Source of the DNA: Girardia tigrina
Taxonomy: Eukaryota
Direction: 5' to 3'
NCBI GenBank assembly: GCA_001938485.1
Contig: MQRK01194127.1
Span: 1-57,448 of the forward strand
Length of the DNA stretch: 57,448 bases
The position numbers and the translations under genes are program-made. The notes under the pieces were generated by a model that was given only the letters and a program-made list of their open reading frames with translations, was not told the origin of the DNA and did no database searches. Shown here piece by piece: positions 692 through 42,000 of this stretch. Positions within the stretch are counted from its first letter, which is position 1. The number at the start of each line of letters is the position of its first letter.

Positions 692-1237
692 TAATAATTG
701 TGTTAAAAATATACTTTTGGTGTCATGATTGATATCGAACCTAAAAATGGTCTTGTTACATCTTTACATGAAGTGCATTCAACTTAAAGGAAATTATCTA
801 GAAAATGAGGAAACACTTTCTCAATTTCCTCTTTATTTCGCGTACATTTTAGAACCCCATCGTATTTTGGAATATTGAAACCACATCTCAAATGTAATCG
901 ATTCATATGAGTATAATCATCAATAGAGTACAACCATCATTTGACAAAATTATAAGCACAAAATCAATCAAACAGAAATAAGTAATTGAAAGTCAACGCG
1001 AAAAATTGCTATTTATTTTTATCGTTCCAACAAAATGCACAATTTCCTTCATTGTTTATTGGTTCAATAATCGATATTCAGTACTGAAAATCAATGTGTA
1101 TAGATAATAAATTAATAGCCACACATATACGTACAAATCGATTGTGTATAAATATAAAATACAAATATTGATTCAGATAAAATATAACGATAATAATAAC
1201 TATAATCAATAAGGAAGTACGGCGAGTCGCGATCGGG

Positions 1238-1447
1238 TCAACCCGACCAGTCTTTGGCTTCTTTGAAGGGGCCCCAACCGTGAAAACATCGCCGGAAATT
1301 ATTAGATTCTTTCTTTTTCTGGGTGATCTTCAACTGGCGCGTCTGATTGGGCTGTATTCGCGCCATGTGCTCTTGGTACAGCTTCGCTGCTTTCAAGGAC
1401 AATTTCTTCTCGACGTCTGATGTGCGGTTTCCGAACCAGAGATAGAT
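1238..1447 (-). CDS. FLII: Flightless-I exon 11 (terminal)
   Basis: [21 protein letters not shown]...[22 protein letters not shown]. Confidence 0.92.
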   Translation of the reverse strand: MYLWFGNRTSDVEKKLSLKAAKLYQEHMARIQPNQTRQLKITQKKKESNNFRRCFHGWGPFKEAKDWSG

Positions 1448-4369: not shown

Positions 4370-4412
<43 letters not shown>

Positions 4413-5602
4413 GGATCAAACAATTTCACATTTATGCTTTGTCAAGGTAACATTTCACAGTAATTTCACAAAAAAATTTTTGCTTTTTTTATTCAGTTCT
4501 GAGTTACAGTGTTAAAAATGGAAGTCAACAAAGAAAAAATTCGGTACATTTTACAGTTTTTATTCGATAAAGGCGAAAATGCAAGCCAGGCGGCTGTTAT
4601 TGTGAATAGTGTTTATGGTGCCAATACTGTAACAACTAATTACACGCAATTTCGGTTTCGTCGATTCCGTGGAGGCATTTTTAATGTTAAAGATGCACCT
4701 CACACAGGCAGGCCTATCGTTGAAAATGTCGATATAATATCGGCAATGATCGAAGTTGACCGGCATGTTAGTAGTCGTAGCATCGCACAGGAGCTGAAGA
4801 TCGACCACAAAACGGTTTTAAACCATTTGGGTAAAGCAGGATTCATAAATAAACTTGATGTTTGGGTTCTACGCCAATTAACACAAAAAAACATGATGGA
4901 TCGAATTTCCATCTGCGAAGCCTTGGCCAAACGAAATGAAATCGACCCATTTCTTAAACGAATGGTTACTGGGGATGAGAAATGGGTCACATACGAAAAT
5001 ATTGTACGAAAACGATCGTGGTCAAAACACGGTGAAGCACCTCAAACGGTCACCAAACCAGGACTAACGACCAGGAAGGTTCTACTGTGTATTTGGTGGG
5101 ACTGGATATGAATCATTTATTATGAGTTGCTTCCGTATGACCAAACACTAAATTCAGATCTGTACTGTCAACTGGACCGTTTGAAGATAGCAATTGATGA
5201 GAAACGACCAGGATTGGCCAACAGAAGAGGTGTTGTGTTCCATCACGACAACGCCAGACCAAATACGTCTGTAGTGACTCGCTAGAATCTCAGGGAGCTT
5301 GGTTGGGCAGTTTTAATGCATCCACCATATAGTCCGGACCCATATTACCACCTTTTTCTCGCATTTCAAAATTTCCTGAGTGATAAGAAATTGGGGTCAA
5401 TAGAAGATTGTGAAAATCGATTACTACAGTTCATCGCCAATAAGGACCAAGACTTCTACGAAAGAGGCATTATGAAGCTACCTTCAAAATGGCAACTAAT
5501 TATACAACAAAACGGTGCATATTTGACTTCAAGAGGACAATCCGAAACATGTTAAATAAAGTTTTGAATTTCACACTAAAATAATGGACTTCTTTTTCCC
5601 CA

Positions 5603-5658
<56 letters not shown>

Positions 5659-20600: not shown

Positions 20601-23600
20601 ACATACAATTTTAACGGAAATAAATATATACCTATATAACTTTCTACGATGTGGTTTGTCCTCGCTTTTCATGAACCCAGATTCACCATGACAACCTTCA
20701 AACACTGTGATTTTTCCATCAAAGAGTGCGAGAAATTCTTCACTCTCGTCTTCCTGTTCAATTCTTTCACATCGACAATCGGCACACAAATAATTCCTAA
20801 GATTAACCGCGTGGACGGCAGCACACGTTACTTTGTCCAATGATGCTTCCTTGCCAATCCAATAATAAATGGAATAGAAAATACTGTTGTGAGCTTTTTC
20901 ATCGACATTTGTATGTAGAATTATATAACAGTCGCCATTATAAAAAGTTCCAAAAGTGAGTTCCTCATTGACTTTTCTGGGATAAAATTCGTCAATTTCC
21001 CAAATTTCTATGCCAGGTATTACACCCACATCCTAAAATTGTAAAGTTCTATTCAATTCATTGCAACAAATGATTTTTAAATAAAATAATTCTTCAAATC
21101 CTAATTATTATCAGACACCTTGACAAAATTAAACAAGCTGGATCATATCTTTAGTCATTTTTAGAGCAATACCCGAAGAAAAAGAAGCCAGAAGTAAGAA
21201 AGTTAAATGACTGAATATGTGGTAAAAGCTAATTTGCATCCATCAAAAATGATTTTCATCTTTGTGTGGGTTTATTAAGGAATTACTTTTTAACTTGTTC
21301 CATGTGATCAAATAATAACAATGCACAAGAACTTTGAGCAACTTCATAAACTCAATGCGAAAATTTAAGAACAAATATCCCAGTTTGACCAATGGAAAAG
21401 ATGAACTATTTTGTTGTGCGACCCCTCATTCTGTATTAAATTTTGTCGCAACCCATTGGTAAATAATGAACTTTTTTAATCAACAGTGGAGTTACAGGGA
21501 AATAAAATAAATTTTTTAAGCACGGTTTTATTTATGTATATAGTGATGTCTATAGAACTAAGTATAGTTTTATATTACACTTGATATAGTGGAAATTCGA
21601 TGGCAAAGAGTATCTTTTGATAATGGTTTTTTTAATCATTACCATATTTTTCTCCATGCATAATTGATGTCATTTTATTGCCGCGGAATGAATAGGCGAT
21701 TCTCCAATTGTATGAGGTTTTAAATTTTTCGCAATTAAATACGAAACTTCTAAGGATGCCAGAAAATAATTTTCAGGGACCGATGTATAAGTTTTCAGAA
21801 ATGTATTTTGATTTTTCATGACCTCAGCTCGTTTCTTAAAAAAATGTTTAGGATTTACATAATAAATCGTTATGCTTAGTTTCCAAATATCTTTTTTTAA
21901 TTTGGCAGATTTGGTGCTTTCGTGTGCCAGTTTTTCATTACAATTAACACACAACGGATATTCGATCCCTTAATATTTTAATTTAACTTTTTTTGTAAAA
22001 ATTAAAATTAGTTAAAAAAGTTAGATTTAGAAATTAAAAATAAGTTAAAAATTTAATATAAAAATACAAAATTAATTATTTCATTTAATTAATAATTTAT
22101 TATTACAGTACTCATTGAGTTATTTGAACTCTCAGTTATTTGAAGAAAATAGTAAAATTTTTTTCAAAATGATTTATTTTTCCAAATGATTTAATGGCAT
22201 TTTTAAAATGATGACATAATTTTCATAATTGAGTTATTTGAACCTTTTACAAATCCCCAAGGATTCAAATAAATCAGCGGCTACTGTAATATTATTAGAA
22301 AAAAATAGGAAAGCTATGAAAATAAAATTTAAATTAAAGTTGATATAAATTAATGTGATGCCTATTTTTTCAGCACGAAAAAGGTTTTTCTATGGCCTTG
22401 TATTTTTGTATTGGTAAATAAATTTCTTCAAATTTGGTGACCCCCAAAAATCTGTTTGCGACCCCTTGTTTGCACACCACATGTCATTCAAAAACGCTGC
22501 AGGAAATATAGTTTAAAATTATTCATTATGTATTTAAAATTAATTATTTGTTTCGGTCACCTACAGTGACAAATGCTGATTATGTGGAAGAGGTCATAAA
22601 CTGCTTTCTGAGAAAACAAACAACGCACTATCTATGAAAACAGAATCCAGAAATTTATAAAAGGTTTCGTGACAGTAAAAAATCATGTTGGCCACATGAT
22701 TCATTAATAAATTTTACTTAAAACCCTACAGGAATTTTTGAAAACATTTAACAAAATCTGTTCAACTTAAAAAGAACAATTAAACTTAATTCAAATTATA
22801 AAAATAATAAATCCAATAATTAAATAAAAATCGAAATACTTCTTCGAATAATCTACTGTAGTCCAAATTTGGTTTAGCAATAGCATCCTGCCATCTTTTG
22901 GCGGACAATAATTTCTCTTCTTTTTCTCTTTCTTCTAAAACTGCATCTTTATCTTTAGCCACTTTTTGCATTCCCTCTAGTACACGTTTACTATCGCTAC
23001 TTTTCTCACTTGAGTCTTCCAATTTTTTTCTTCGTAATCTACGAATTCTTGAAGCAGTATCCTTAATACAATTTGAAATTTAATTCGAATTTCATACATT
23101 TTTTTAAAAAAGAAATAAAAATTTCGAAAGATGCAATGTAAAAAAATTGAACTAAATTAATGCAATTGATGAATATGCAATCTTTGAATACGATTTTCTA
23201 ATTAATCACCTATTTATTAATAAATGATTGAAAACTGATATTTCATATTGAAATGAATAAGCCACAAGCGAGAAGTGAAAACATGGATAGCTTGACCGAA
23301 AGACTCTCTTCATGTTGTTATTCATCGGTCTTTCGGTGATTCATTCAACAGATCTATTCTAAGAGCACCGATGTTTATCAACTATCAACATCTAGTTTCA
23401 AATAAATATACTTTCACAGTTCAAATGATGATTTGTTTAATCATTCACGAAAATTATACAGAAATGCAAACACAATATTTGACAAAATAAATATCTCTTT
23501 AAAGAAGTTATAATATTATAAGGTACATTTTGAAGCACTAGAGCAGACAAACACGAGAATTGTTTCACTAAAATTGTCCGCAAATAAAGAATGTGCAATA

Positions 23601-26600
23601 TGGGCGCCAATAATGATGAGGAAATATGGCAACCTCAGCATCAGTCCGAGTTTGAACCATTTGATCAATCTGTCCATTAAACGATGCAAGATTATTTTGT
23701 CTTTCATTTAATCAATCAGAAAATACAAGAATCAAAATTGTGCATAACAGATGCAAATATTGTCAAATTAATCGATTTTGCTGATAAAAATTTGTTTGTT
23801 CGTCTATAATTTTAAACCAGAGTAATTATTTTTTTCGTAATTATTTATATTATTTTGTGTATTAGTCATTTCTAATTTATTATCATCAGACTATCATCAA
23901 TCAAATATATCCAAAATAATCTATGAAAAGTTCATTTTTACGTTAAGCAATTACATTCTTACTGTCTGACAGCGAAGAATATCAAATTTATGATTTCTAT
24001 TAAAGGCATAACTGGATAAATTTATTTATTGATAACACTAAAAATAATATTTATATATAATGCAATAACTTTGTTATATCCAAGTATATGATATTAAAAC
24101 ACTAGACTTCGATTTCAATCAGAAAAAAATAATTAAGAGCACTAAAACCACTCACACAAATCCGAATGTACGTTTTGAACCAATGTTAATCTTTGCCACT
24201 TCAGCTTCATATACAAGCATCAGTCATAATACTACATTCTATGATTTTGAGGTCATCTTATTGATCCTGTGGGTTTCATTATGTAGTACTGTAAATGGAC
24301 ATGTGGTATTTCGTTTAATTCCTGATATAACTTAAATAGAAAGTACATTATTTCCTCCTTGTTTATTTCTGACTGGCATGCTCCAATAATCCAGTGATCG
24401 TACACCATCAGTTTCGTTTTAGATGGACTGATCGGAATATTTTTAAGATTCTGGATGAGACTTTAGATGCATCTAGAGAAATAAAAGCTTGTGTAGAGAT
24501 TGTAATCACTTTTTCCCTGTGGAAGAATTAACTGATGATGAGGACGAAGATCATACAGAAATTCATGACATTGCTGGCGACGTAGATCTGTTGGACCTTG
24601 TTTTTTCGTGGAGAAAACGTCAACTGAAATTCGATTAAATTCTACAAATACCTCGACAGTATATCCAGGAAAAGTGTGAGTTGCTTCTTGGAGAAATCTA
24701 TCACTTGCCTCTCAAGATATTCGATCATTTTGGGAAGAAATTATTCGTTTGTTTAAAGAAAACCGTGAGTTAAAAGCTAGACAAAAGATTGAACACTCAT
24801 AAATTGATACATGGAGAACTGAAACAATTTTTTGTGATACTAATGTTGTCATGCTATCACATTCTCCCAGTAAGCAGATGTAGTGGGAGAGAAGTGAGGA
24901 TGCCTGTTACCATTCGCTTCTTAAAAATAAAAATGGCTACATGCAGGAGATAATAATCAATTGGATGCTACTGCTCACAAAAATACTTTCATTCCTTGAC
25001 CTGACAAAAAAACATTCTTCGTTAGGAAATCTTCGAAAACATTTTTCTGACAAAAGCATTGTACCGAATTTTGGGACAATGTGGATTAAAAATATTTCTT
25101 AAATGGAAGTCCGTACGTTTTTGGTTCACAATTTTAACTTTGTGCGATTTTCTAGGCACAACATCGATGTCTCACAAGGCGGAAAAGTAATCAGCAAAGA
25201 ACTATATTGACCACAAGTATATTTTGTGACATGGTATCAGTTATTCCTTTTCATCCCCTTTAATTTAATTTAATTTAATCGCACGATGATTTAAAGATTG
25301 TATTCACCTTTTCTGCGTTTAGCAGCCATCAAATTCGCTGTGCAGTATGTTACTACAAAGGCCAAATTTAAGTATATTTAGTGTATTGTAACTCTCAATC
25401 ATCTTGCTTTAGGACATACCCAACTTGCACAAAATATCTTAATGGTGCATGTTTTTTGGCTTATTATTGTACATGAAAAAATTAGCACTCTAATAGTGCG
25501 GTACATATTTTTATCTCTGTATTAGATTGGTTATCGAATTAATCACATCCTTTACTTAGAGAATAATTATATTTTTAAGTTTTAACTCGAGAGGCAAACG
25601 TTTGAGATGGTTCGTGTGTAGAAGATTAAATAAATTATTAAATTAGTATTATTAAAATTATTTTAAGAAACACTAAAGGCTATTACATTTTCAAAAGCCT
25701 AAAAAAACAATCAGAATATTCAAAATATCAATCAACCACTTAGGTAGGACAGACATCACTATAAAACAACATTACAATTCATATAACTTAAAATTAAGAT
25801 AAAAAATCAAAGTATTTCTTTGAAACAGGGAAATCAGTTTCGAATCCGAATATACATTTTTCTGAAATAATGTCATGTATGAAACATGGTTAATCTAACA
25901 GTTACTCAGTAGATTGTTATTTATGTGACAATTTAGTACTATATTATAAGAAATTATATTCATGATAAGGCATAATTAATTAGATATAAGATAAATACAA
26001 AACACATTTCGATATTGATACGTCTTGCCATGAGGTAAGGCTATGAAAAGAATACCAATATTGTTCTCAAGCGGAAAATAAACTAATTTTTGTCGACATC
26101 ACTTCAAGTTATAAACAAAGTGAACTTCCAAATTGTGCTAAATCAAGATACATTGGAGTTTTAAAATATCATTTTTTTTGTTATTTTTAAGAACTCTAAT
26201 TTGGTTATCACCACTTTTATTATTATCACAATTCGAATTATCTCTAGGACAATTCACAACAAACTTTCATCAGTTGACATAGAGCCAAAGTAATAAGATT
26301 TTAGATTGATTCGTTTTAAAAGCTCGAAAAAGGATTTCCATTTTATACAATTAAATTATTTTTATCGTTACATGATTATTTTATACATTTTTAGAAATTT
26401 AATATTTTAATATATCTCAATATAAAATGTACTTAAGAGAAATTAATTTAATGATTTAAATTTTCAATTATTCGAATTAATAATTTCATCTAAAATTTTA
26501 CTAAAGAATTTATTTTTTTGACAAATATTGATTTAATTGATTTGAAAAATTTTGTTTGAATCTTTTCACATTAATAAAACTATTGGGTTGATTAGAAAAT

Positions 26601-29600
26601 TCTTGCGCTTTTTATGAATAAACAAAAGTTGGAAAATTCAAATTTGAGCTTTAAGAAGGTTTCGCATTATGTAACCTATTGCAATGTTAGTATTGCATAA
26701 TCCGCATAATCTTCGTGATTTTGATCAAGAACGTCGAAAAATGGCCGCCGCTTCTTTTCACTTATTTCCTCTATCGACTGACTGGTTTGTCAGCATCGTC
26801 ACAGGTGATGAGAATGGGGTTCAATACAACAACATTAAACCCCAAAGTTCCTGATTGAATCTATTCAAAAATCTTGTGCATCTAAAGCTACCTATCCAAA
26901 GCCTGATCTACATCCGCAGTCTTATCTTATTTTGTCCATATGATGCGACACCAATGGCTTACTCTCTATGAACGTCTTCCAAAAACCAAAAGCATCACCT
27001 CTGAGCTCTAATGTGCGCAATTGGACAAATTATCCACCAAGATAAAGAAACTGCGGCCTAACAATGGGTCAATTAGATTCCTGCACGACAACGTTCGACC
27101 ACAAGTCACTCTGATAGCGCACAAAAGCTGCTTGACCTGGACTGCGAGATCTTTATCCATCCACCCTATATCACAAGCTTGTCACTATCAGACTTTCATC
27201 TGCACCGACCGTTAACCGATTCTCTGGTCACACAATCGTTCAGCAATAATACTGAGTTGGAGATTCGGATGAAATCCTTCTTAAAATCAAGGCTTGCTGA
27301 ATTTAACGCATATGGTATTCATGTTCTCCCTGAAAGATTGGAAAAAGTGATTGACAACGATGATGCCTATTTAGATTATTTCTGGTGATCTCACATCCAG
27401 ATCCGAGCTCTTGTTAATAAATACTGTTTTGTTTAGCTATTTCGTTTATCATATTCCTCAGTTATGATATCTAATTTTTAAATGCATGTTTTTCTCAAAT
27501 GCAAAGATGAGAGATTAGCTTTACATCTATTGATCTTAAAAATATTATCAAACATAAAATACATATAATAAGAACAATTATATTATGCAAAATAAATAAT
27601 TTTTATCTCTTAAGATACTATAGACTCAAAAGATAATAATTAAGTAATTACAATTAATCCAACAAAAAATTGTGAATCTTAAAACTTCATCACTAAAAAA
27701 CGTGACATACCTTTAGAGAAACTTCTTTTGATACTGCTTTTGGTGGGGCTCCACGAGCCAACTGCATTTGTGTCTCAAGGGAAAAATCAATGTTGTAAAA
27801 TGCATATTTTGATTTGGTATCATTTTCGCCGAGTTTAGGTGGCATTTTTAGGTTGGGATTGTTATCAATGTTGAAGGTTATTAGGGATTCAATGAGGACA
27901 TTTATAGCGTCTGGCAGGGTTACAAGCTTGTTCATTCGCAAATTCAAGTGTTTGAGTTGCCCACACCGACACAAGCCTAAAATATGCATATCATATCACT
28001 GATCAAAGAAGTTCTACATTAATAAAACTATTTTTACTGTTGTTTAAGAGTACAGACAATAATTTTGTAATTTATATATTTTTTCAACTTTTGCAATAAA
28101 TATTAAACCAATATCAGAACAGTAGAAATATGTAACAACGATATTATGGTTGAGTCTTGGAGACCCGTATAACATTCACAAAATTTCAATATTTTGAAGG
28201 AATTATCAGGGCAACTGTTAGCTCCAGTTATTGAAAAGTATAGCAACGTTGCACAAATTTCTTGAGAAATACGCTCATCTCAAAATGGCACGGGTCAAAT
28301 AGACCCAACTGTGTGATTGTCGGATTAATAATAGTAATGCATAAGATGAAAATTTAATTAAATTGTCGAATAAATTTCATTAATAAGTAACTGATCTCAT
28401 GAGTTTCAAACCCGTTACCTGCAAAAACTTACTATAACATATGAGAAATTACAAACAACATTTTCTTGATTTACTTGAACATTTCATAAAAACACTAGCT
28501 ATGTTATGTTTATATTTTTAAAATCTTTCTAAATTTACATTTCTATGACTTCCGGTGACATTTTTATATAATCTAACGTCACTCTTGACTCGATGTCCTT
28601 TTCTTATAAAAGATCGAAAGTGTTACCATGTCTATTTTGTCTGCCTTCTTTTCTAAGTCCATACTTCCCATCTACTACCTTCAATTTAACAAACCTACCA
28701 TTATGCAAGTCACATGAAATTTTAAATACAAATTCAAACCCCTTAAATGATCACTTTCTATTTTCCAAAAAATATGAACTGGTTAATATTATAATGTATG
28801 TCAAACAAAACTCATCCATTAAAAAAATATATTTTTAAAGTAATATACTTCGACGGATAAACCTTTATCCATAAATCACTTATTAATCTTTGGTTTGCTT
28901 GTATATATTTCTAGTCTGGTAAACATTAGACTGAAATTATTCGAATAAATATATGATAAAGTGCATTTTAAAAATTGTTAATATAGAACATGTTTTGATC
29001 AGCATTGATCATCATCAGCTATTAATTAGTGTTTGATAGTGTTTAATTAAACTGATTAAATGGTAACAAAAATAAAATTAATTGATTTTATTGGACAAAA
29101 AAAGAATTATTTTATTTATATATATACCGTATTACTTCGATTTACCGCGGCGGCGTTTATTTTAAATGCTGAATCGAAGGTGCGGTGTTAAATCTAAGGC
29201 AGCGTTTATTCGAGGGCGGTGTTTATTTCAGAAATTAAAAAAATTAAAATTAAAAAACTTTATTCAAAAAAATAATAATTTGTTTAAAAATACACAATAT
29301 TTTCGCTTATTTTTTTATAGAAAAGAATGCCGAGCAAACGATCTTATGACCTAGCTTTCAAACAGAGAGCAAAACACAATCTTACTTTTAGATATATTAT
29401 ATTATAAAGTATGATTGATTGTATAATTGTACTTTTTAATGCGGCGTTAAATCGAAGTAATACGGTATATATATATATATATATAATCATTATTATTATT
29501 ATTAATTATGTAAAAAAAATTTTAAAGACACAATTTGAGACTGTAGTGAAAAATTATATAAATACTTTTGGAAGATAATTTTAAAGATCAGGATAGTGTT

Positions 29601-31612
29601 TTTCTAAATAATTTTAAGGAGATTGGTGTTAAATTATATTGTACTAAAACACTGAATTTCTCCTTCATATTACATATGCTAGAGTTTTGAAAAACTTTTA
29701 AAATATGATATTAAAGCAGTAAATAATGAATGAAATTTAAAAATTATGTCACCATCTCATAAAACTCAAAATATGTTCACCAATAAATCTATTAGACATT
29801 TAACTTATATTTTTTATATATATCTAAATGCAATTGACGTGATGCAACATACATTTAATAGATTGTCCGTAATCTCAATTTAAGAACATCGTCTGAAAAA
29901 ATGATAATAGTAAAACTACTGATCGTAGGAGAATGTGTCAATGTGATATCAAAATTGATAATTTGAAAATCATATACAGCATTTGGATAGTTATTAGGTG
30001 AAATTGTCGTGTGAGGTGTTTTAATTAGATCATGTTATCCTAAAATCAATGTTTAAACGCCAGTCTCAACCAATTTTTGTGAGAATGTTTTATTAGCATA
30101 ATCTCATTCAACCGATGACATAATTTGCATTAATTAGTCAGTGAACTAACAAAGACAGATGATTATTTTATTATAAACATATTTGAAAATGAATGAGTTT
30201 CGTTTTTTATAAAATATTTTTGGTAAAATGATGAAATAAATAGCATACACAAGTAGATAGACCCTAAAAATATTATAAAATAAACAATTGAATATCTAAA
30301 AAGCCTTTATTTTCTGAAATACTAAATAAAAATGCTTTACGAGAATAAATATTTCGTAATATAAGATCGACAAGATGGAAATTGAGGTTTTGACTCGATT
30401 TTACCAGACAAAAAGGTGTGACACACGAGTTATTATTTCAAATGCATAAATAATTTACATTAGTATAATAATTTCATTCAATATCCTTTGATACGAAAAG
30501 CCGTTGAAAAAATTACTTCCAATTGTCAATAAAGATTAATTGAAGTTAAATATTACATAAAATTATAAAATAAGTAAAAACAATTTATAAATTAGAAAAA
30601 GACACTCACCTTCTGGGATATTTTCCAACATATTTTCCGAAGCGCTGAAAACTTCCAAATTACTAAGTTTACCAATACCAGGTGGAATTCCATTGAATGT
30701 CAACTGATTGTTGTCAATATAAAGCTTTTTTAATTTTGAAAGACGAGTAATAAATGAAGGTAAACTGCACAAACGATTTCGACTTAGATTTAAAATTTCT
30801 AAGTTCGGCCAGCAATCGACAAGGCCACTTAATTCATCAATGTCATTTCCACTTAAGTTGAGTTTCGTTAAGCTGGCGATTTCGTATACAGATTGGGGGA
30901 CTTTTTGAAGGTTGTTATCAGAAATATCAAGATCTTGAAGGCATTGCAATTTGTCAAGATCAGAAGGTATCGTGTCTAAACGCCTAGAGGTGTTACTGAG
31001 CAATAAGGTTGTCAATTTTTTAAGTCCGCTAATTGATCGAAGCTGAGATACTGTTAAAGGATTATTAGATAAATTTAATGACTGTAAATTGGGCATCCTA
31101 CGTAAATTTGTAGGAAACCCAGTAATTTGATTGTTGCTCAAATCAAGTATCATCAAACTAACACAATTAGCAAACAAATCTTTGGGAACGGTTTGTATTT
31201 GATTGTCACTGAGATTGAGTACCAATAAAGATTTGGCATCAAACAATCCTTTGGGAACTTCTGTCAACTGATTGAAACTTAAATCAACAACTTGTAAATG
31301 AGGATTATCGAATAATTTATCCGGTAAACAATCACCAGTGATCTTATTTTTTCGAGCATTAAAAACTCGTAAAGATTTTAATTCTGTACACCAATCACCG
31401 GAAAGTTGTTGGATGTTGTTTTTACTAACAGATAAGCGTTGAAGTTGAGTAAGCTTTTCAACGCCTTTAGGAATCTGATCAATCCCAGTTGAGACGAGTT
31501 TCAACCATTGAATGCGAGTCATGTTACTGAAAGCCGCACTACAATCATGGTCGTTGATCTCAACTGAGGACAAGTCTATTCCAAGAAGAAATTGAGAAAC
31601 AGATTTAGACAT
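1238..31612 (-). CDS. FLII: Flightless-I (N-terminal LRRs + gelsolin repeats), complete spliced CDS, 11 exons: 31612-30610, 27976-27711, 23061-22840, 21032-20632, 14316-13929, 9809-9585, 9518-9394, 9345-8739, 1950-1786, 1735-1508, 1447-1238
   Basis: All junctions are GT..AG with consistent phases. Total 3840 nt = 1279 aa + TGA. Recognisable FliI motifs: [102 protein letters not shown]. Confidence 0.96.
1508..1735 (-). CDS. FLII: Flightless-I exon 10
   Basis: EGEEPDIFW...[12 protein letters not shown]...[19 protein letters not shown]. Confidence 0.93.
1786..1950 (-). CDS. FLII: Flightless-I exon 9
   Basis: TTTCAG acceptor, [12 protein letters not shown]...ICWIGK; the donor could alternatively lie 3 nt further on. 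Confidence 0.88.
2400..3160 (+). mobile_element. 5'-truncated RTE-like LINE (RT C-terminus)
   Basis: [46 protein letters not shown]; internal stop near 2600; A/GAA-rich tail. Confidence 0.88.
4374..4410. repeat. (TA)n microsatellite
   Basis: Direct; further tracts at about 5607-5658, 38993-39033, 46803-46828. Confidence 0.9.
4411..5608 (+). mobile_element. Mariner (D,D34D) transposon, defective transposase about 4518-5555
   Basis: [28 protein letters not shown] motifs; stop at 5109-5111 and frameshifts; right TIR ...CCCCAACCT; (TA)n on both flanks. Confidence 0.93.
5837..7065 (+). mobile_element. Penelope-like retroelement fragment (RT C-terminus + GIY-YIG endonuclease + pseudo-LTR)
   Basis: [13 protein letters not shown]; [30 protein letters not shown]; [13 protein letters not shown]; downstream TATATAAAAG (6911-6920) and a hammerhead motif. 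Confidence 0.9.
6948..6982 (+). ncRNA. Minimal type I hammerhead ribozyme motif (Penelope-type)
   Basis: CAA-CTGAAGA-T-GCCA ATA TGGC-GAAA-CTAG-TA-TTG: core boxes, stem I CAA/TTG, stem II GCCA/TGGC, palindromic ACTAGT. Confidence 0.75.
8739..9345 (-). CDS. FLII: Flightless-I exon 8
   Basis: GHFFTQDSY...YFWQGREAS...RMFQQQE...ALCTRTIE. Confidence 0.93.
9394..9518 (-). CDS. FLII: Flightless-I exon 7
   Basis: [19 protein letters not shown]...KMKIDM, between 66-nt and 48-nt introns; not in the ORF track. Confidence 0.87.
9585..9809 (-). CDS. FLII: Flightless-I exon 6
   Basis: [15 protein letters not shown]...LKLAYEL...EPQIFK. Confidence 0.9.
11927..12159. mobile_element. piggyBac-type MITE
   Basis: TTAA|CCCTTTACTGAC ... 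GCCAGGAAAGGG|TTAA. Confidence 0.75.
13350..13790 (+). mobile_element. Decayed Penelope-like GIY-YIG fragment
   Basis: [28 protein letters not shown]...RVKEH parallels the 5862..6734 ORF. Confidence 0.7.
13929..14316 (-). CDS. FLII: Flightless-I exon 5
   Basis: LYLWFG...INQCERKG...[15 protein letters not shown]; CTAG acceptor, GTAACT donor. Confidence 0.92.
15238..15283. repeat. Degenerate (CCTAAC)n telomere-like tract
   Basis: ACCCTAACCTTAACCCCTAACTTTAACCCTTAACCCTAACCCTAAC. Confidence 0.7.
15350..18370 (-). mobile_element. Decayed Mutator-like (MULE) element
   Basis: Minus-strand fragments IMCWVHM (~16740), [14 protein letters not shown]-like [17 protein letters not shown] (~16060-16110); inverted similarity between ~15700-15760 and ~18075-18130; boundaries approximate. 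Confidence 0.72.
19050..20280 (+). mobile_element. 5'-truncated non-LTR retrotransposon with C-terminal C2H2 zinc fingers
   Basis: [18 protein letters not shown] (RT C-terminus), then [39 protein letters not shown]; stops and frameshifts. Confidence 0.8.
20632..21032 (-). CDS. FLII: Flightless-I exon 4 (gelsolin repeat 1)
   Basis: [13 protein letters not shown]...[10 protein letters not shown]...IYYWIG. Confidence 0.94.
21400..22480 (-). mobile_element. hAT (Buster/Charlie-like) relic
   Basis: [19 protein letters not shown]...[20 protein letters not shown]; GCGACCCC subterminal motifs; boundaries approximate. Confidence 0.8.
22106..22286. mobile_element. pogo/Tigger-type MITE nested in the hAT relic
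   Basis: TA|CAGTACTCATTGAGTTATTTGAA ... TTCAAATAAATCAGCGGCTACTG|TA. Confidence 0.7.
22840..23061 (-). CDS. FLII: Flightless-I exon 3 (linker)
   Basis: [13 protein letters not shown]...[12 protein letters not shown], phase 0/0. Confidence 0.9.
24430..25240 (+). mobile_element. Heavily decayed piggyBac (PGBD-like) transposase
   Basis: Acidic TDDEDED start, [21 protein letters not shown] remnants across frames. Confidence 0.6.
26581..27420 (+). mobile_element. Decayed mariner
   Basis: TATTGGGTTG terminus; [18 protein letters not shown]...[17 protein letters not shown]. Confidence 0.85.
27711..27976 (-). CDS. FLII: Flightless-I exon 2 (last LRRs, linker)
   Basis: TTTTAG acceptor, [11 protein letters not shown]...FYNIDFSL, donor GTATGT. 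Confidence 0.93.
29127..29465. mobile_element. Tc2/pogo-type MITE with TA target duplication
   Basis: TA|CCGTATTACTTCGATTTA ... TAAATCGAAGTAATACGG|TA. Confidence 0.9.
30610..31612 (-). CDS. FLII: Flightless-I exon 1 (start codon, LRR domain)
   Basis: ORF 30563..31612 of tandem LRRs; donor AG|GTGAGT at 30609; in-frame TAA directly before the ATG. Confidence 0.95.
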
Positions 31613-31662
31613 TTAATCACACAGTTATATTAAAGGATATAAAAAGTTGTTTTTTGTAAAAA

Positions 31663-31752
31663 TTAATTGGTTTCAATCGCTTGATTTTCTTCTGAAATAA
31701 TGCGACGTTTGGATTCTTTAGAAATATTTGCTCTTAGTTTTGTAACACGATC
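31663..31752 (-). CDS. SNAPIN: Snapin exon 3 (terminal coding part)
   Basis: ATTTCAG acceptor; DRVTKLRANISKESKRRIISEENQAIETN-TAA resembles the Snapin C-terminus and completes a 135-aa protein. Confidence 0.85.
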   Translation of the reverse strand, partial: DRVTKLRANISKESKRRIISEENQAIETN

Positions 31753-34700
31753 CTGAAATGATTTTGAAATTAAACAAAATATTTTTATAAAAGAGCGAAA
31801 TATTTGATAACACAACATTGGCATTATAAACATAGAGCTTTACCGATTATACATAGTGAAGACTTAATGATATAGTTACAAATATTTAATATTTATTTTT
31901 AAATACATTTTAATAAAATTATTAGTGTTATAGGAAAAATAAATTTTAAAAATCCACAATAATACCTTGTTTCTCGAAATATAAGACACTGCCTTTGATT
32001 AATTTTGATAGAAAAATTACCAGTAGTAATTACTTATACTAGCATATTTTCGAAATTAGAAATTAAAAATAGACAAAAATAAGAATAAAAATCACAAATA
32101 AATTTATTCTTCAACATAAATCTCATCTTCCATAAAATATTCATTTTCATAACCATTTAAAGCTTCTTTGTGGTCATCAATCGAACACAAGTTACATGCT
32201 CTTAATACTTGATAATTAATTAGAGCATAAGGTTTTCTTAACAGTATCAGGTGATATTTTATATTTTACTGTGTAACTTTTTTCTTTTTTGGTTCATGAA
32301 GGGATGAAAAATGATTAATTTAAAAACAAATTTTTTATAACAATTTTTAAAATTTACATATTTTTTTGAAATTATCAAATAAAATATTTTAAAAAAAATG
32401 GTAGGTCTTATATTAATGGATGTCTTATATTAATATTCCCAAAAATATCTTTAAATTTTGGACTAAGTCTTATACAGGGAGATGTCTCATATTTGGAGAA
32501 ACACGGTAAGATACTCACAAAGAAGTATCTTATTTAATAAGATAAACGTTTTACTTTATCCCATCTTTATACCAACCTATACATCATGTAATAAAAAAAT
32601 ATAACAACCAAGTCATTGGAAAAGCATTTATAAATCAGTTCATCCTAGAGAATAATTCATCATATTATTGAGCGATTATCAGCAATAATTTAATAAATTT
32701 TGCATATTCTTGACATTTCTGAAATCTTTATTATATGAAAGAATAGTGTCTGGGAATTCTGTAAGTCATTCACAATCAAAATGTACGATTGATATAATAT
32801 TCGATTAATGAATCTTCATGGACAACTGAAAACAAAAATATATCGCTAATGTAATATTAAAAAATCAGATGAATTGAGAGTGAAAATGTGAGACAATAGG
32901 ATAAAATGCTCTCATGAGACCTGTCGATGCAAGAGCCAGTTATCAATTGGCAGTAAAGGAAGTTAACGGGTAGATTTTAGCGTAATAGAGAAGCAACAGC
33001 GGAAAGACCATGTTCTTGTTACTGCCGACTGATTTTCGCACCCGATTTACATACAATACTTGAATTTACATTAACAAAAAAGTAAATACTTGATTTGATC
33101 CGATTGATTTTTAAACTGATATTATTATTTGGTTGTTACAAAGAAAAATGAAAATACAATAAATATTTAACTGTAAATAATAATGGTTATGTAACAGTGA
33201 TCAATGCGATCAATTTTAACAACATAAAACATGCTTTTAATACAAATGTAATAAATACATATGATGAAAAAACCACATTCAACATAGCGCGAAATGCTCG
33301 TTTATCGAGATTGATAAGGAAGAGATCACACTTTTGCAGACGCATTCATCAGATATGGATATAATGAAATAGCAATTTGGACATGGAACTGTGATAAAAT
33401 AGAGTCTTTTGAATGTATTTCATTATTCAACTTAAAAGAATCGATTAATATACATAAATGACTTCCACATATTATTTTGTCTCTAAAAACGAGCTTATTC
33501 CAATCAACAAGTAAGCAGAATATAAGCACAATCTTCTTATCTAAAAACCAATTTGAATTATTGGCAAATATAAGGAATTGTAAGGATGCAAATATGAATT
33601 TGAGACTTAATCAAAATGAATAATAAATAGTGCAAAACAAATCCCACTATTTATTAATACATCAACTTAGCAAAACAAATCCTACGGGAAACTGAAATAT
33701 CTCGAATGTAAAAAAACTAAATAAAGTCGATTGTTCCTAGATTTATCCTTGTAACTGAGGACCTCGTTTTCTGAGTGACAAATTAAAGTGAACATGAAGG
33801 ACTATAAAAGTACTCAAACGTATTTGACGATGATCTTAATTTGAAGATAATCGTTTGATTCATTTAAAGTGAAACCAATGGTACACTATTCAATGAATCC
33901 CTCACCTTTTTGTCTGAGACTTTAACAGTTAATAATAGTAAGACTATTTGCAGGTTAAGCATTATTTATATAACACTGTTTCTCGAAACCGCCAAGTTCT
34001 ACCACATGATTGCTTAAATATTATCTCTTAATAATATGTCAGTTGTTTCGTACAAGTTACTTTGAACAGTGTACTTTGAACATACAAAAATAAGTCAAAA
34101 TATAATGCCAAAAGATTTATCAAAAATGTTTTCGAACGAAGGCATATTTATTCTTACAAATATTTATTTAATTAATAATAAGATAGTTTTTTATTGTAGA
34201 TGAGTGTTTTAATAAATTAGAATAATATTTTAAAATTGGACTTCGATAGTAATAAAACGACTTTATTCTCATGTCTGAACTTGGTGACTAATTCGTTATC
34301 CTTAGATATATTTAATATTTTAACATTCAAGAATTAAAGGACACTTGAAGTTTATAATTACATTAATTGTTAAATTCCAAATATTCGGTTTGTTGAAAAA
34401 TAAATAACACAATAATACTAATGACTTTAGAAGTTACTGAAAAATTACTAAATAAATAGTTTAATAAGCATAAATAATGATATTCTTGTTGTAATAATAA
34501 TGCTTCTTTAATATTAACTCAACGTGTACGGAGTCTATTTAATAACGTAAAGGACGGAGTGGGGAAACTTGAGTCTCCCAAACGAAAACATTACCTCATA
34601 ATAATAAATAAGTTAATAAATGATTGCAACTAATAGGTTTTTATTCAGGATTTATCTAAATTGAAAAGAGAGAAAGAAAAATTTTAATGATATTATTAGG

Positions 34701-37700
34701 TTGGAACGAAAGTTTTGTCCGCTATTTAAAAAAAATGTAAATAAATTTGTAAATTTAATTTTGCTTTATATGGATTTTATGTATTATATATTCTTAGGGG
34801 CATTTTGATAAAATATTTTAGGAACAAGTTAAAATGTCAAAAAAGCGTGAAGAAATCCGCAACTTGATTTTACTCGAATTCAAACCTGGAAGTACAGCAG
34901 TGGAAGTGTCTAAAAGCAGGCCGAGATTCTAAGACTAAAAGAGCATGCTTTCGATTGTATGCAAAATTACGCTCCGCAAATACGCATCTTAAAGACAAAA
35001 GGTGTTCCTGACACTCAATAACCATTGATTAACGAACGTTACATCGTCTCATTGAAGCAAATCAGACCCAAGCAACGTGTGAACTGACTTCTGAACTTTA
35101 AACTTACCCTATTACTATTAATCGAAACCTTTAAGAAACATAAACGTGGTCAAAAATAAACTCAATGATATTGAAAAAAATCGGTGAATTAACAATTGTT
35201 TTTGGCCATTGCAAAAATTCAATTTTATTGCATCGCAACAGATTTGGACATGCGATAAGAAGTGTCTTGTCTACGACAACCAGAAACGCAAAAACCAATG
35301 GCTGAGTCAAGATCAACTTTAAAAATGGAAGCCTTGAAGTGATCCGAATCAAAAAAATGTGATGTTGTGTGTTTTGTGAATGGTCCAACTGAGAACTCCT
35401 TTCACGCGATCAAACCATCACTGAAGTTTCTTGCACCCACTTAGACCTTGTTTAGGCCTATTTGTGTGTTCATGGTATCAACAAGACAACGCTAGACTTC
35501 ATGTTTCTCGCCTGACGTGTTAAAACTTGGTAGAATTGAATTGGGATGTTCTGAAACACATACCATATAGCCCAGACGTTGCTACATCCGATTATTATTT
35601 TTTCATCTGACTTGAACATTTCCTTCACCGACATCGCTTCATTTAAGAAGAACACTTGGAACAAGCCCTTCAAATTTTTTTCGACATCTAAACGCTATAG
35701 TTTTACCACCGCGGAATTTTCTTGTTGCAGTCCCTCTGGGAAAAAATAATCGACAGTAATGGCGATTAAATTAATGAAAACGACCCCTTGTTATTGTAAA
35801 AATTTTATCTTTAATAAAATTTTAATTTACTGACAATACTTTCGTCCCAACCTAATACTTATGAAAAAATAATCTTTGGCGAGTTCATGCCTCCATTTCG
35901 TTCTCCAAGCGTTAAAATTTTGTAAAATACATATGATTGATAGATGTTATACTATTAGCACAAGATTGTATAGAAAATCTATCCAGTCTTCAAAGACCAC
36001 ATGTCACCACAAAATTTTATGAAAACTCATGTCCGAATAGATATAAAAAATACGTCTGAAAATGAAAGAAGTTATTGAAAACAATGAGAAATCCATTAAT
36101 CTTGGTTTAATATGGCTAAAATATCTATGGATATTCTGTCTTAAATCTCAAGAGACGTTTTACAAAATTGGAAAAATAAATACTTAGGTTAATTATTTAA
36201 TATTTAATCCACTATTATATTTATTACTATTCACACGAAATAGTAAAGAAATATGGGTTATGGAAAATCGAAACGTAATACTTGAAGTGACACGAGATAC
36301 TCAGATTGTTGACTCTGAAATTTAAAAAGAATACAGCGATTTATGGAGCTAAATCCTTATAATTTGGGACACACAATCTTTACATATTGACAAATTATCA
36401 ATGAAATATGTAAACATTCAATAAATTTGAATGATGATAAAAACCACTTGTGGTAACAAATGATAAACATCCCTAATTGCTCGATTCTGGGAAAACATAC
36501 TAGAACTCAGTCAAGAAAATGAATGTCATTTCATTTATAAAATAGCATGTTCAATATATAATAAGGAAGGAAGACAAGAAAACGTGTTTTGAGAAATAAT
36601 TCTCATCATCAGGTCCTAGTCCTTTGTGTATCAACATAATATGAGACACTAAATGAATCGAAATGTCAATTCCATTCCCATTAAGGAATCCTCTACGGAT
36701 CCCTTAATTGTCAAACTGAGAATGCACATTGGTCAGTTGTCGATTGTTTCGATCATCAAAGGTCTCTTTGTCATTTAATGGTCGGGACGATAGGAAAACC
36801 AAATCAATATCTCAGTTAGACAACTGATAACTGAAACTAATCCCTTGTGATAAATTTTTATTTTGTGCTATTTATTATTTGAAAAAACTTTAGTAAATGG
36901 GTATCATATAACTAATCTACAAGGAGCGCCAAAATATCTGCAAAGCGAATTTAATGCGCAGATGTAAGAGATAAAATCCAATTTTTAAACAATGATTTTA
37001 CATATTATGAAAACAAATTGATTTACTTTTTTTGATTAAATATAAACAATAATTGATAAAAATCTTTACATCAAAAACATTACCGACCGTTTCCGTGTAA
37101 AATTGACTCGAAAAAATCAAATTCAAAAAATGAAGTCAATAGAAACCGAATCAAATAGAAACAGCACACAGAAATATCAACACTGATCAATAGAGAAACA
37201 AAAGATATCGCACAAGACAACCCGATCAATCAATGTTTATTTGAGAACAATGATCTGTTTCAAATTTCAAAAAATTATCGATTATTTTTCAAAATGAAAG
37301 AGAAAAGTAAACAAATAATAAATTCGATAAAAATGATAAAATTGTGTAAATATTGACACAACGCAACCGATATTCACTATTATTATTTGATTAAATTATA
37401 TCAAACATTAATTTAATTTTAATTACCGTAAAATCATTAATATAAGATACGGCCTTTATGATGATAAGAATAGACTTATTTTGTTTAAGGCTCTTTTTAA
37501 AACTTAATGAAATACGACTTTTAATTTATTTAGCAAATCCTAGAGAGCAAATCCTATTGGTAAATTTGGTTTGTAAAGAGAAAAGATAATCATTATCATA
37601 ATTACACAAAATATCAGAAAATCATACAAAATTATATGTAGTCACATGTTCCTATAATAATAATGGATCTAGAGCAGGAACAAGACTCTTCAACATCGGA

Positions 37701-38988
37701 GATTCTGGTGTTCGCATTTGGAAAAAGGAAAAATATCTACTTAAAAAGATAAACCCAAACAAAAGAGCAAGACTTGGACAGTGTACATATTACACAGAAA
37801 TTAAAGATAAACTTATTGATTGCGTTAAAATTCTTCGAAATAATAAAAGGACGTAAAGAAACTTATTTTAAATGTTATCAATATAAAGAACAATAATTTA
37901 TATAAATTGTATAAAGAAATAATAAGGCCGAAACGGTTGCTTCCTTTTCCATTAAATTTGACTTTTTAAATTCATGAATCGCCATGAAACTCCAAAACGA
38001 TTTGTTAAAGGAAAAAGTTGAAGTTTGAAAACTTTAAAAAACATCAGTTGAGTAGAAATGTTTCTCATAACTAGTAAATCAAAATTAATTTATTTTCATA
38101 TCCATTTTGTATGCGGGCAGAACTCTATTTGGCCAACAGAATTTTTTTCGTTATCTTTTGTAGAAATGAAAATTACTATTACATTTTTAATCAATTTATT
38201 TTGTTATTAGTAACTATTAAAATCTTTTGTAGAAGGGAAAATTTTCATACAAATCAATTTACAACTCAATTTTGCCATTAAATAGTCATTAATAACACAA
38301 TAAATTTATTATAAAGCGTGGAAGGAAGAAAAACAAAACATTTCTATTTAATACAGTTTAAACATTCGTAAAACGATTTTTCGCAATACAAATTTTTTGA
38401 TTTAATAGTTTGATCAAATTTTCGGTATCCAGAAAATTGCTCCCCAAAAATTTCTCCCTATAAAAATTACTCCATAAAAAACTTGGTTTGGGTCACGATT
38501 AGGGATAGAGTAACGGTTTTGGGGCTGTAGGTAAATTTATTTAAATTTAAAAATTTACACCCTATACTTTATACATTGATATTATATTTACAGTTATTGT
38601 TTACTATTAAAATTCACCATCTTGCTAGCAATTACTTTGCAGAGCACTTGTACGGAGATCAATTTTTGGAGAGCAATTTTATGTAAATCCCATTTTCACA
38701 TAATCATTTATTGTCATCGAAAATGAGTAAATGTACAAAGTTTGAAGAAAATTGATTGAGTAAAAGCTTTCAAAAATAGGTTTCTAAGTTCCATGGATAC
38801 ACATATAGAAAGCAAGTCAATATGAAGAATGAAAAAATGTCGATAAAGTTCCATTTTGCTTCGATTAACCAGTAAAATTTAGAATTAACTTCAAAGAAAC
38901 AAAAGATATCAAAATAAATACGACGGGTTCGGGAAAAAATGGATTTAGGGTCATATGATTGTTAGGTCTGTAAATATATAAATGATAA

Positions 38989-39036
<48 letters not shown>

Positions 39037-42000
39037 CGTTGTGAAACGTAATTTCTTGTGAAATATCTAAATCTGTAAAATAAATCACTTAACTTGAAAG
39101 ACATTCAGTGAAGTGTATCACGAATAAATTGAAATTTACGGAAAATGTTTCTAAATTTATTAATCGATATCTGATTTCAATAAGCACTATTATATCTACA
39201 TGTCAACAGTTACCAGTTGTTTATTAGCAAGAAAATCTTGGAGCTTATAAAGTTTCACGATGGTTTTACATCACTAGTTTAGAAATACAATTGGAAAAGG
39301 TGCATAAAATTTTACAATTGATGTAACAAGACAAAATACGCGAAGGTTCTTTTTATGGGTTACTGAACTAATTTCAACAAATGATCTTAAAATCCCCTTA
39401 AGTCTAACCCTTAGTTTAAATCAAATCATTTGTTGAAATTAATTCTACTTCCCCTTTTTATTAGCTTACTTTCTATATCGGTATGTATGTATCCATGGAA
39501 TTTAGAAACCTAATTTTGAAGGCTTTTTACTCAATCAATTTTCTCCAAACTTTGCACACTTCCTCGTTCTCGATGACAATTAATGATTAAGTGAAAACTT
39601 GATCAAAATAATAAAATCAAAAAAATAGTTTTTACAAAAAAAACGATTTACGATTATCCGCAAATGTTCAAACTGTATTAAATGGAAATATTTTGGTGTC
39701 TTCCTTCCACGCTTTATAATAAATTTATTGTGTTATTGATGACTATTTGATGGCAAAATGGAGTTGTAAATTGTTTTGTATGAAATTTTGCCTTCTACAA
39801 AGAAGATTACAAAAAGAATTCTGTTGGCCAAGTAGAGTTCTGTTGGCCAAGTAGAGTTCTGTCCGCATAACGAATGGCTATGAATTTTTTTGTGATTTAC
39901 TAGTTTTAATTAAGATTCGACATTGGGACAGTTTACTAAATAATTATTTTTACTAAAATAGAAAATAATAAATAAAAAATTATATTAATACTTGTTGGGA
40001 GCGTTGTTGAGTTCATAAAATTTTGAATTTACAATCTGATCAAATTAATAATTAAACAATTACATTCCGTAAAACATTGTTATAGATATGTTCAAATAAG
40101 ATTTTCAGAAATTTAATGTAAAAATTAATTTATGTAAGAAATAAATTAAATTTTACGGCAGGTTTATTAAAAGATTTATGCAAAGATTTATTATGAAGTA
40201 AAAAAGTTAATTTTAAATTTGATGAAAATATTTAATTGAAATAAAATCAAAAGAAATATAAAGTTTAATATTTTACTTGCGAAATGAAAATAAACTAAAC
40301 TATTTTACCACGTTTTTCTTAGCTTGGTTTCTTCTCTGTCTGGAACAAATCTTGCGATTGATTTTTCGACCACTTTCAGTCATCCAATTGAGCTGAATTT
40401 TTTATACAGGCTTGCTTCCGATGACAATACATTTACTTTACGGATGTACGGAAAAAATTAATAAATTGAACAAATATTGTGAAAATCAAGTGATAATTAA
40501 GTGTATAAGTATTAAAATTAGGTTTAAAAATTATTTTGAAATAAACTTGCTTTTATTAAAATAAAACTTTGTTACTTTGGTTTTATTATCATTTCTGTTA
40601 TTCGAAATCAATCGAAAGATTTGAATTCCTAAATGATAACTAAAAATAGTAAAATAATATTNNNNNNNNNNNNNNNNNNNNNNNNNNNNNNNNNNNNNNN
40701 NNNNNNNNNNNGATCATTTCTATGCCCCACGTTTTTGGTTAGGTATAAAATTTCTCACATGTCTAGAAAAAAATTATTTTCCTCTTTTTAGTGCATTGGT
40801 AATGCTTGAAAAACGTGGTTGTTTTTATAAGAATTGTTTTTTATTAATAATATTATTTGTAACTTTATTTTACACGATTAAATCGAAGTAAATTAAAAAT
40901 GTAATTATAATTTTTTGGGGAAATTGTAATTGGAATCAAAATACAATTGTAAAACAATTAAATCGACTTAAATGAAAATGCGATTTTAATTTTATTTTGG
41001 AAAACATAATTATTAATGGAAAAATAATTTTATTTTTTTATGTAAAAAAAAGGATAATTTAAAAGTTGTTAAATTAAACGAAATTGCGATTTTAATTCTA
41101 TTTTCAAAATATTATTTTATTAAATCCAAAGTAATTTTTAAAACTATTATGAAAACGAAATGAAAAATGCTATTGTATAGAATTGGGAAATTTAATTGAG
41201 AAACAGATAAATTTAAAGGTACAATAAAATTGAAATTTAATAAAAGACGCAACAAAATCTTTGTGACAAAATTTTAATAAATTCACTTTATAATTTTTTA
41301 TTAAAAAAAGTATAGAATTTTAATTCGTAAAAATAGAATAACCATATTTATATTTATATCAATTCTTATTTATAATGGTCTGTGTAAAAAGAAAGTGCAA
41401 AAGTTCCTCGGAAATATTTGTTTAAAAAACTCAAATTGTGATAGAAATAAAGTTTTGTGTTAATGTCAACGTCTTTTGATCAAGAGCCCAATAATACTAA
41501 AAACAATAATGAAAGAGAAATAAATAATCATGAAAAATAAATACTAAAAAATCGATAATAATAAATGATAATTCTCAGTTGAACAAATAATTAAATAAAC
41601 ATTAATAAAGTAATAAATATAGCCAGAACCTGAGAGTTCTGGAGGATATTGTTGATGAGCGTCAATCTCCGCTTGCAGTTGTTCAATTTCTTGAGATATG
41701 GATCGATATTAATGGGGACTGCGAGATTGTCACTTATATCGCTTAAATCTGAATGATGTGTCGATAATCAAATCTTTCTTTCCCTAACACAATCTCGTAA
41801 AACTCTTCCGTTCTATCTCCGATGAAAAACTTTTTCTTTCAATCAATTTTCTTTATCAATACATTTTAAATGATTAATTATTATTTTCCCGAAAAAAAAT
41901 GTATGTGTAACTTTAAACGTGTGTCGGACATTTGTTTTTCAACATTATCTTCGTTTAATTTTGAACTTATTTAACAAATTATTTTAATTTAATTTAAAAG

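What the first reader, a model, noticed from the sequence alone, without database searches (positions are those of the whole stretch)
31580..31760. Candidate Snapin-Flightless-I dicistronic/operon-like unit: Snapin stop only 50 nt before the FLII ATG
Seen: Snapin's terminal exon lies about 9.9 kb beyond exon 2 and ends (TAA 31665-31663) 50 nt upstream of the FLII ATG (31612) on the same strand. The spacer TTTTTACAAAAAACAACTTTTTATATCCTTTAATATAACTGTGTGATTAA has no AG, so there is no cis or trans splice acceptor between the ORFs. It has no AATAAA, only the weak AATATA and an ATTAAA overlapping the ATG. It is not a multiple of 3 and ends in a TAA in frame with FLII, so a simple readthrough fusion is excluded. 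There is little room for a separate 3' end plus promoter. Inference: both ORFs share one exon (31752-30610), so Snapin mRNA probably continues through FLII. Known context: flatworms have SL trans-splicing and some operons, but these need an acceptor AG. From memory (please verify), Drosophila Snapin is on a dicistronic mRNA with a different partner. I do not know of a described Snapin-FLII pairing.
Basis: partly seen in the sequence, partly recalled or inferred. Interest (0 to 1): 0.92.

Follow-up and report, generated by a model that had tools for sequence, protein, structure and literature searches.

The report
Conserved flatworm Snapin–Flightless-I dicistronic mRNA
Flatworms appear to make two unrelated proteins, the small vesicle-trafficking protein Snapin and the large actin regulator Flightless-I, from one shared messenger RNA; fruit flies do the same with Snapin and a different partner gene, but I found no description of it in flatworms.

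Summary
Snapin's last exon (31752-31663) and the first FLII coding exon form one exon, with 50 nt between stop and ATG. The same shared-exon layout occurs in a close relative, in flukes and in tapeworms (spacers 1-141 nt, no conserved frame). Intron-free transcript contigs from four parasitic flatworms carry complete Snapin followed by complete FLII. In S. mansoni the published spliced leader sits 5' of Snapin, not of FLII, and supplies Snapin's AUG. Flatworm Snapin ORFs are almost free of internal Met and depleted of out-of-frame AUGs. Their start codons have a pyrimidine at -3 (6/6), and 5/5 with their own AUG are overlapped by a short out-of-frame ORF. Best reading: a mature dicistronic mRNA in which ribosomes that skip Snapin's start scan on to FLII. 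This is the mechanism shown for Drosophila snapin-hemK2. Not shown: any transcript from this species, single-molecule reads, or FLII translation from the dicistron. A second spliced-leader event at the shared exon is not excluded. A 50-N gap lies inside Snapin intron 2. Verdict: a new, deeply conserved member of a known kind.

The parts
43612..43660 (-). U-rich tract and AG 35 nt upstream of the Snapin ATG; candidate spliced-leader acceptor or 5' UTR boundary (inferred)
   Evidence: leaders are joined at the equivalent place in S. mansoni and S. solidus
43567..43581 (-). 4-codon out-of-frame ORF starting 4 nt before, and overlapping, the Snapin start codon
43379..43577 (-). Snapin coding exon 1 (ATG at 43577, T at -3); one internal out-of-frame ATG at 43561 opening a 3-codon ORF
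41630..41748 (-). Snapin coding exon 2, no ATG in any frame
31753..41629 (-). Snapin intron 2, nominally 9,877 nt, with a 50-N gap at 40662-40711 and transposon remains
31663..31752 (-). Snapin terminal coding segment (29 aa plus TAA), 5' part of the shared exon
31613..31662 (-). 50-nt inter-ORF spacer: no AG, no ATG, no AATAAA, no stable fold
30610..31612 (-). FLII first coding segment (LRR domain, 334 codons), 3' part of the shared exon
1238..27977 (-). Remaining FLII exons, approximate: 27977-27729, 22983-22840, 21032-20631, 14327-13866, 9818-8736, 1998-1789, 1723-1241; stop at 1240-1238
1055..1060 (-). AATAAA about 180 nt after the FLII stop, likely 3' end of the whole unit (a second one at 1017)

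Best explanation
One transcript starts upstream of Snapin, is cis-spliced through Snapin exons 1-3 and all FLII exons, and is polyadenylated after FLII. The result is a mature dicistronic mRNA (shown at contig level in four parasitic flatworms, inferred here). Its 5' end carries a spliced leader in S. mansoni (shown) and probably S. solidus and L008; here this is inferred only. Some ribosomes start at the weak Snapin AUG and make Snapin. Others pass it, by leaky scanning or by translating a very short out-of-frame ORF that straddles the Snapin start and then resuming scanning. They cross an AUG-poor stretch (439 nt AUG-free here) and start at the FLII AUG. The translation step is inferred from sequence signatures and from the Drosophila precedent; it was not measured.
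For: Shared-exon layout in window, L001, C. daubneyi, S. solidus and E. granulosus genomes. Intron-free contigs with Snapin then full FLII: L007, L008, L009, S. mansoni L010-L018 (Pfam). L009 segments map to separate exons of the S. solidus genome. 84 of 123 S. mansoni blocks have a contig of 5 kb or more, which with a 4,167-nt CDS and about 470 nt of 3' UTR should reach into Snapin exons 1-2 (inference). L010 begins with the last 24 nt of the published S. mansoni leader, whose AUG is Snapin's only in-frame start. Internal Met: 0 in six of seven Snapins, 1 in L008, against 1.5-1.9% in FLII; 0 in 498 further residues from other gene models. Out-of-frame ATG in exons 1+2: 14 seen, 26.3 expected from codon shuffles, P about 0.001. 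The depletion lies upstream of the shared exon, where it would be needless if FLII had its own 5' end at exon 3. Base at -3: pyrimidine for Snapin 6/6, purine for FLII 6/8. Overlapping short ORF at the Snapin start in 5/5, shuffle product 0.005. Drosophila snapin works this way.
Against: No transcript from this species was found. Logan contigs are de Bruijn assemblies, not single molecules, and the tool reads the longest contigs first, so overlapping monocistronic mRNAs could hide in them. L008 has 6 AUGs other than the Snapin start between its Snapin start region and FLII, one in frame and 103 nt from FLII; S. mansoni has 6 in the variable N-terminal part. The FLII AUG context here and in C. 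daubneyi is not strong (T at -3). No single species is individually significant in most AUG tests, species are related, no monocistronic Snapin control was available, and the overlapping-ORF pattern was noticed after the fact.
Confidence: 0.7

Rival explanations
1. The exon-3 acceptor is dual-use: cis-splicing gives Snapin mRNA with FLII as a long untranslated tail, and leader trans-splicing at the same AG gives the mRNA that makes FLII.
For: Sharing of acceptors between cis- and trans-splicing is extensive in parasitic flatworms (PMC12582326). The 5' part of the shared exon has no ATG in 8/8 species. Contig assembly could drop a short leader branch; 39 of 123 S. mansoni blocks have contigs under 5 kb that I could not read.
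Against: The three leader or leader-like 5' ends seen are all on Snapin exon 1. AUG and Met depletion extends through exons 1-2. The acceptor is phase 0, so the leader's AUG would open a 12-29 codon ORF in Snapin frame ahead of FLII. The same paper finds cis-splicing rare at acceptors that resolve operons.
Confidence: 0.15
2. FLII has its own promoter inside Snapin intron 2, with a non-coding exon spliced to 31752, and Snapin is polyadenylated within FLII exon 1 or intron 1 (overlapping monocistronic genes sharing an exon).
For: The intron here is about 10 kb. AATAAA at 30311 lies in FLII intron 1. Drosophila dicistronic loci often also make monocistronic forms (PMC4528330).
Against: The homologous intron is only about 90 nt in E. 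granulosus. Transcript contigs run through Snapin exon 2 into FLII. It does not explain AUG depletion in exons 1-2.
Confidence: 0.07
3. The mRNA is dicistronic, but FLII is made by ribosomes that reinitiate right after finishing Snapin, or by internal entry, helped by the very short spacer.
For: Spacers are 1-50 nt in seven of eight species, and stop and start nearly abut in S. solidus.
Against: No conserved sequence or stable structure around the junction (z-scores -0.6 to 1.6; alignment). A 141-nt repetitive spacer is tolerated in L001. AUG depletion reaches hundreds of nt upstream and the Snapin start is weak.
Confidence: 0.06
4. A Snapin-FLII fusion protein by readthrough or splicing, or an assembly artefact.
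For: Several public gene models fuse Snapin to FLII. The ORFs are in frame with an open spacer in S. mansoni and E. granulosus. A gap lies in intron 2 here.
Against: Spacer length modulo 3 is 2,0,0,1,0,1,1,0 across species. Transcript contigs keep the stop. The junction itself is gap-free and recurs in independent assemblies.
Confidence: 0.02

Closest known systems
Drosophila snapin-hemK2 (CG9958-CG9960) dicistronic mRNA (Wall et al. 2005, PMID 15951443, cited through PMC11892635, PMC2978622 and bioRxiv 10.1101/2024.01.29.576963)
   Same: Snapin is the first cistron, lacks internal Met and has a non-consensus start; the second ORF lies on the same mature mRNA.
   Different: Partner is FLII (about 1,300-1,400 aa, many exons), not a methyltransferase. 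The mRNA is leader-capped in at least some flatworms, and the leader AUG can be Snapin's start or open an overlapping ORF. Leaky scanning is shown in the fly, only inferred here.
Green algal bicistronic mRNAs (PMC11892635)
   Same: Short first ORF, short spacer, no conserved frame, weak first start, AUG depletion before the second ORF.
   Different: Different genes and kingdom; mechanism tested in vivo there.
Flatworm operons resolved by spliced-leader trans-splicing (PMC12582326)
   Same: Same-strand genes under 300 nt apart, often annotated as chimeric models. The upstream Dbl-like RhoGEF gene in flukes and tapeworms may relate to Snapin in this way.
   Different: Those operons have a 3' end and a leader acceptor between cistrons. 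Here the two ORFs share an exon, four of eight spacers have no AG, and the leader seen is on the first gene.

Membership tests
Dicistronic mRNA translated by leaky scanning (Drosophila snapin/stoned type) | Two complete, separate ORFs on one spliced transcript | tested here: met
   Met at contig level in four parasitic flatworms; inferred for this species
Dicistronic mRNA translated by leaky scanning (Drosophila snapin/stoned type) | Single molecules span both ORFs | not testable with these tools
   Only short-read contigs available
Dicistronic mRNA translated by leaky scanning (Drosophila snapin/stoned type) | First ORF lacks internal Met and is AUG-poor | tested here: met
   0 internal Met in window and 5 of 6 others; out-of-frame ATG 14 vs 26.3; L008 is an exception
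Dicistronic mRNA translated by leaky scanning (Drosophila snapin/stoned type) | First start codon weaker than second | tested here: inconclusive
   Pyrimidine at -3 for Snapin 6/6, purine for FLII 6/8, but both are T in this window; no flatworm consensus was measured
Dicistronic mRNA translated by leaky scanning (Drosophila snapin/stoned type) | Second ORF translated from this mRNA and sensitive to added upstream AUGs | not testable with these tools
   Needs reporter or ribosome profiling
Spliced-leader-resolved operon (Snapin to FLII) | Acceptor AG with pyrimidine tract between the cistrons | tested here: not met
   No AG in spacers of window, S. solidus, L008, S. mansoni; L001 has one AG 21 nt before the ATG
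Spliced-leader-resolved operon (Snapin to FLII) | Leader on the downstream gene's mRNA | tested here: inconclusive
   Leaders seen only 5' of Snapin; shorter contigs and reads could not be inspected
Spliced-leader-resolved operon (Snapin to FLII) | Room for 3'-end formation of the upstream gene | tested here: not met
   Spacers of 1, 13, 15, 15, 25, 30, 50 nt without AATAAA
Snapin/Pallidin family (upstream ORF) | PF14712 above cut-off | tested here: met
   Window exons 1 and 2 and four transcript ORFs
Flightless-I | N-terminal LRRs followed by gelsolin repeats, grouping with FLII orthologues | tested here: met

The most novel reading that the evidence does not exclude
This is an obligatory dicistronic mRNA kept since the common ancestor of this flatworm lineage, flukes and tapeworms, left unresolved although these animals have leader trans-splicing. 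The Snapin:FLII ratio is set by a short ORF overlapping the Snapin start, in some species opened by the leader's own AUG. Snapin became a first cistron independently in flies and flatworms.
Probability: 0.4. Interest if true: 0.82.

Novelty: new member of a known kind. Interest (0 to 1): 0.64.

Why it matters
Flatworm polycistrons are described as resolved into single-gene mRNAs by trans-splicing; this would be a conserved exception that is translated as two ORFs. It explains why public gene models of at least eight flatworm datasets fuse Snapin to FLII or to the upstream RhoGEF, or omit Snapin. RNAi against either gene in planarians or schistosomes would knock down both, so phenotypes and expression values need care. 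Snapin as first cistron with different partners in flies and flatworms is a testable case of repeated evolution. mRNA reporter transfection exists for planarians (PMC9606109), so the mechanism can be tested directly.

Tried and rejected
Homologue search with Snapin exon 1 found nothing (word-based, length-limited, so uninformative). N runs were not filled or looked up. Internal acceptor at 31691: not conserved in L001. Readthrough: frame not conserved. Structured element at the junction: none. Rfam: no hit in the window. Dbl-like RhoGEF upstream of Snapin: no tblastn hit in this window. Outgroups: no Snapin near FLII in Capitella (26 kb locus) or in an insect-like contig with under 800 nt upstream; the nemertean look-up failed. 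No early-branching flatworm was retrieved. Literature: no paper held has snapin+flightless+operon; none relevant for snapin or flightless with planarian; the 2025 flatworm operon paper names neither gene, but its tables use anonymous IDs and are cut in the held copy, so the pair may be listed there unnamed. Wall et al. 2005 itself was not held.

Full report
Observation. On the minus strand the window holds a three-exon Snapin ORF (43577-43379, 41748-41630, 31752-31663; 135 codons) and a complete Flightless-I gene from ATG 31612 to stop 1240-1238, followed by AATAAA at 1060. Snapin exons 1 and 2 pass the Pfam cut-off separately. Exon 3 is by far the best terminal-exon candidate among 219 (68 vs 23). 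The 50-nt spacer has no AG, ATG or AATAAA. No splice site separates the Snapin stop from the FLII start, so they share the exon 31752-30610. A 50-N gap at 40662-40711 lies in intron 2; it was left unfilled.

Organism. The FLII LRR region groups with two unnamed relatives (87% and 84% identical) as sister to flukes plus tapeworms, support 100/99. It is a flatworm. A planarian is my guess from the AT-rich, large-intron genome; a monogenean is not excluded.

Conservation. A contig of the 84% relative has the same last Snapin exon (27/29 residues) 141 nt before FLII. In the fluke Calicophoron daubneyi the three Snapin exons precede FLII with a 30-nt spacer. In the tapeworms Schistocephalus solidus and Echinococcus granulosus the spacers are 1 and 15 nt. 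Snapin segments also sit inside fused public gene models of Spirometra, Sparganum, Paragonimus, Opisthorchis, Taenia and Schistosoma intercalatum. No Snapin was found near FLII in the annelid Capitella. Spacer lengths modulo 3 vary, so no fusion protein is conserved.

Transcripts. Public assemblies of sequencing runs give intron-free contigs with a full Snapin ORF followed by a full FLII ORF: two unnamed flukes (L007, 13 nt; L008, 25 nt), S. solidus (L009, 1 nt) and S. mansoni (L010-L018, 15 nt). L009 segments map to separate genomic exons, so it is spliced RNA. S. mansoni FLII is on contigs in 123 blocks, 84 of them 5 kb or longer; by length these should extend into Snapin exons 1-2 (inference). 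L010 starts with the last 24 nt of the published S. mansoni leader, and the leader AUG is the only in-frame Snapin start. L009 starts with 11 non-genomic bases ending in GTATG, joined at a genomic AG upstream of Snapin. L008 starts with a leader-like stretch, judged by resemblance only. These are short-read contigs, so they do not prove that single molecules span both ORFs.

Translation signatures. Internal Met is absent from six of seven flatworm Snapins and from 498 residues of other models, against 1.5-1.9% in FLII. Out-of-frame ATGs in exons 1+2 number 14 against 26.3 from codon shuffles (P about 0.001; related species, so overstated). In this window the only two extra ATGs lie within 20 nt of the Snapin start and open 4- and 3-codon ORFs; 439 nt without ATG follow up to FLII. 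All out-of-frame ORFs that could be followed to their stop are 2-19 codons. The base at -3 is a pyrimidine for Snapin in 6/6 and a purine for FLII in 6/8. In 5/5 species where Snapin has its own AUG, a short out-of-frame ORF overlaps it; in S. solidus this ORF starts at the leader AUG. The product of shuffle frequencies is 0.005, but the pattern was noticed after the fact. The junction has no conserved fold. L008 is a partial exception, with AUGs close to FLII.

Mechanism. Most likely (0.70): a mature dicistronic mRNA, with FLII made by ribosomes that bypass the Snapin start through leaky scanning or a short overlapping ORF and then scan on. Shown: layout, conservation, spliced contigs in relatives, leader position in S. 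mansoni, AUG depletion. Inferred: the transcript in this species and the translation route. Main rival (0.15): leader trans-splicing at the shared exon's acceptor gives a separate FLII mRNA; such shared acceptors are common in flatworms (PMC12582326). Lesser rivals: own promoter in intron 2 (0.07), reinitiation after Snapin or internal entry (0.06), fusion or artefact (0.02).

Known systems. Drosophila snapin is the first cistron of a dicistronic mRNA with hemK2/CG9960. It lacks internal Met, and the second ORF is translated by leaky scanning (Wall et al. 2005, as summarised in PMC11892635 and PMC2978622). The flatworm unit meets the two features of that class that could be tested cleanly; the start-context test was inconclusive in this window. 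It fails the spacer features of a leader-resolved operon (PMC12582326). I found no paper on a Snapin-FLII pair in the library searched. The library lacks most subscription journals, and the 2025 operon survey uses anonymous gene IDs, so absence is not proven.

Verdict. A real, deeply conserved feature: a new member of a known kind, with possible variant features (leader-capped dicistron, leader AUG used as Snapin start or as overlapping ORF). Interest 0.64; 0.82 if the most novel reading holds.

Noticed in passing
L006 6896-9964; L019 7481-8700; proteins P0294, P0295, P0401, P0426, P0427: In flukes and tapeworms a Dbl-like RhoGEF gene lies just upstream of Snapin on the same strand and is often fused to it in gene models. 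This suggests a RhoGEF to [Snapin-FLII] operon. No RhoGEF match in this window.
   Followed up: partly
L010 22-24; L019 8685-9045: Snapin has no ATG of its own in S. mansoni (leader AUG is in frame) and none in the open part of E. granulosus exon 1, where it is unannotated; it would need the leader AUG or a non-AUG start.
   Followed up: partly
L001 269-409: The close relative has a 141-nt spacer expanded by a short tandem repeat, ATG-free, with one AG 21 nt before the FLII ATG. Its Snapin last exon is 27/29 identical in protein despite many synonymous changes.
   Followed up: partly
L006 14428-14497: In S. solidus the Snapin last exon is also open in the FLII frame up to the FLII ATG; the Spirometra gene model uses that frame.
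   Followed up: no
window 34694-35857: Tc1/mariner-like element of about 1.16 kb with 38-nt terminal inverted repeats, in Snapin intron 2.
   Followed up: no
window 38057-39917: Long imperfect fold-back with nested inverted arms (up to 94 nt, 94%) around a TA run, in Snapin intron 2.
   Followed up: no
window 4509-5111, 5862-6734, 2638-3084, 19291-20171, 21670-21954, 53060-53455: Transposon remains: mariner transposase, GIY-YIG (Penelope-like), probable LINE fragments, zinc-finger ORF, DDE fragments (those without Pfam hits are judged by eye).
   Followed up: no
window 51220-51575 (+): Probable coding exon of an unidentified gene on the opposite strand, no Pfam hit.
   Followed up: no
window 30610-31612: The FLII LRR region is one 1-kb exon here and in two relatives, whereas flukes and tapeworms have several introns in it.
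   Followed up: no
window 42001-43000: Snapin intron 1 is extremely AT-rich (GC 8.9% in this kilobase).
   Followed up: no
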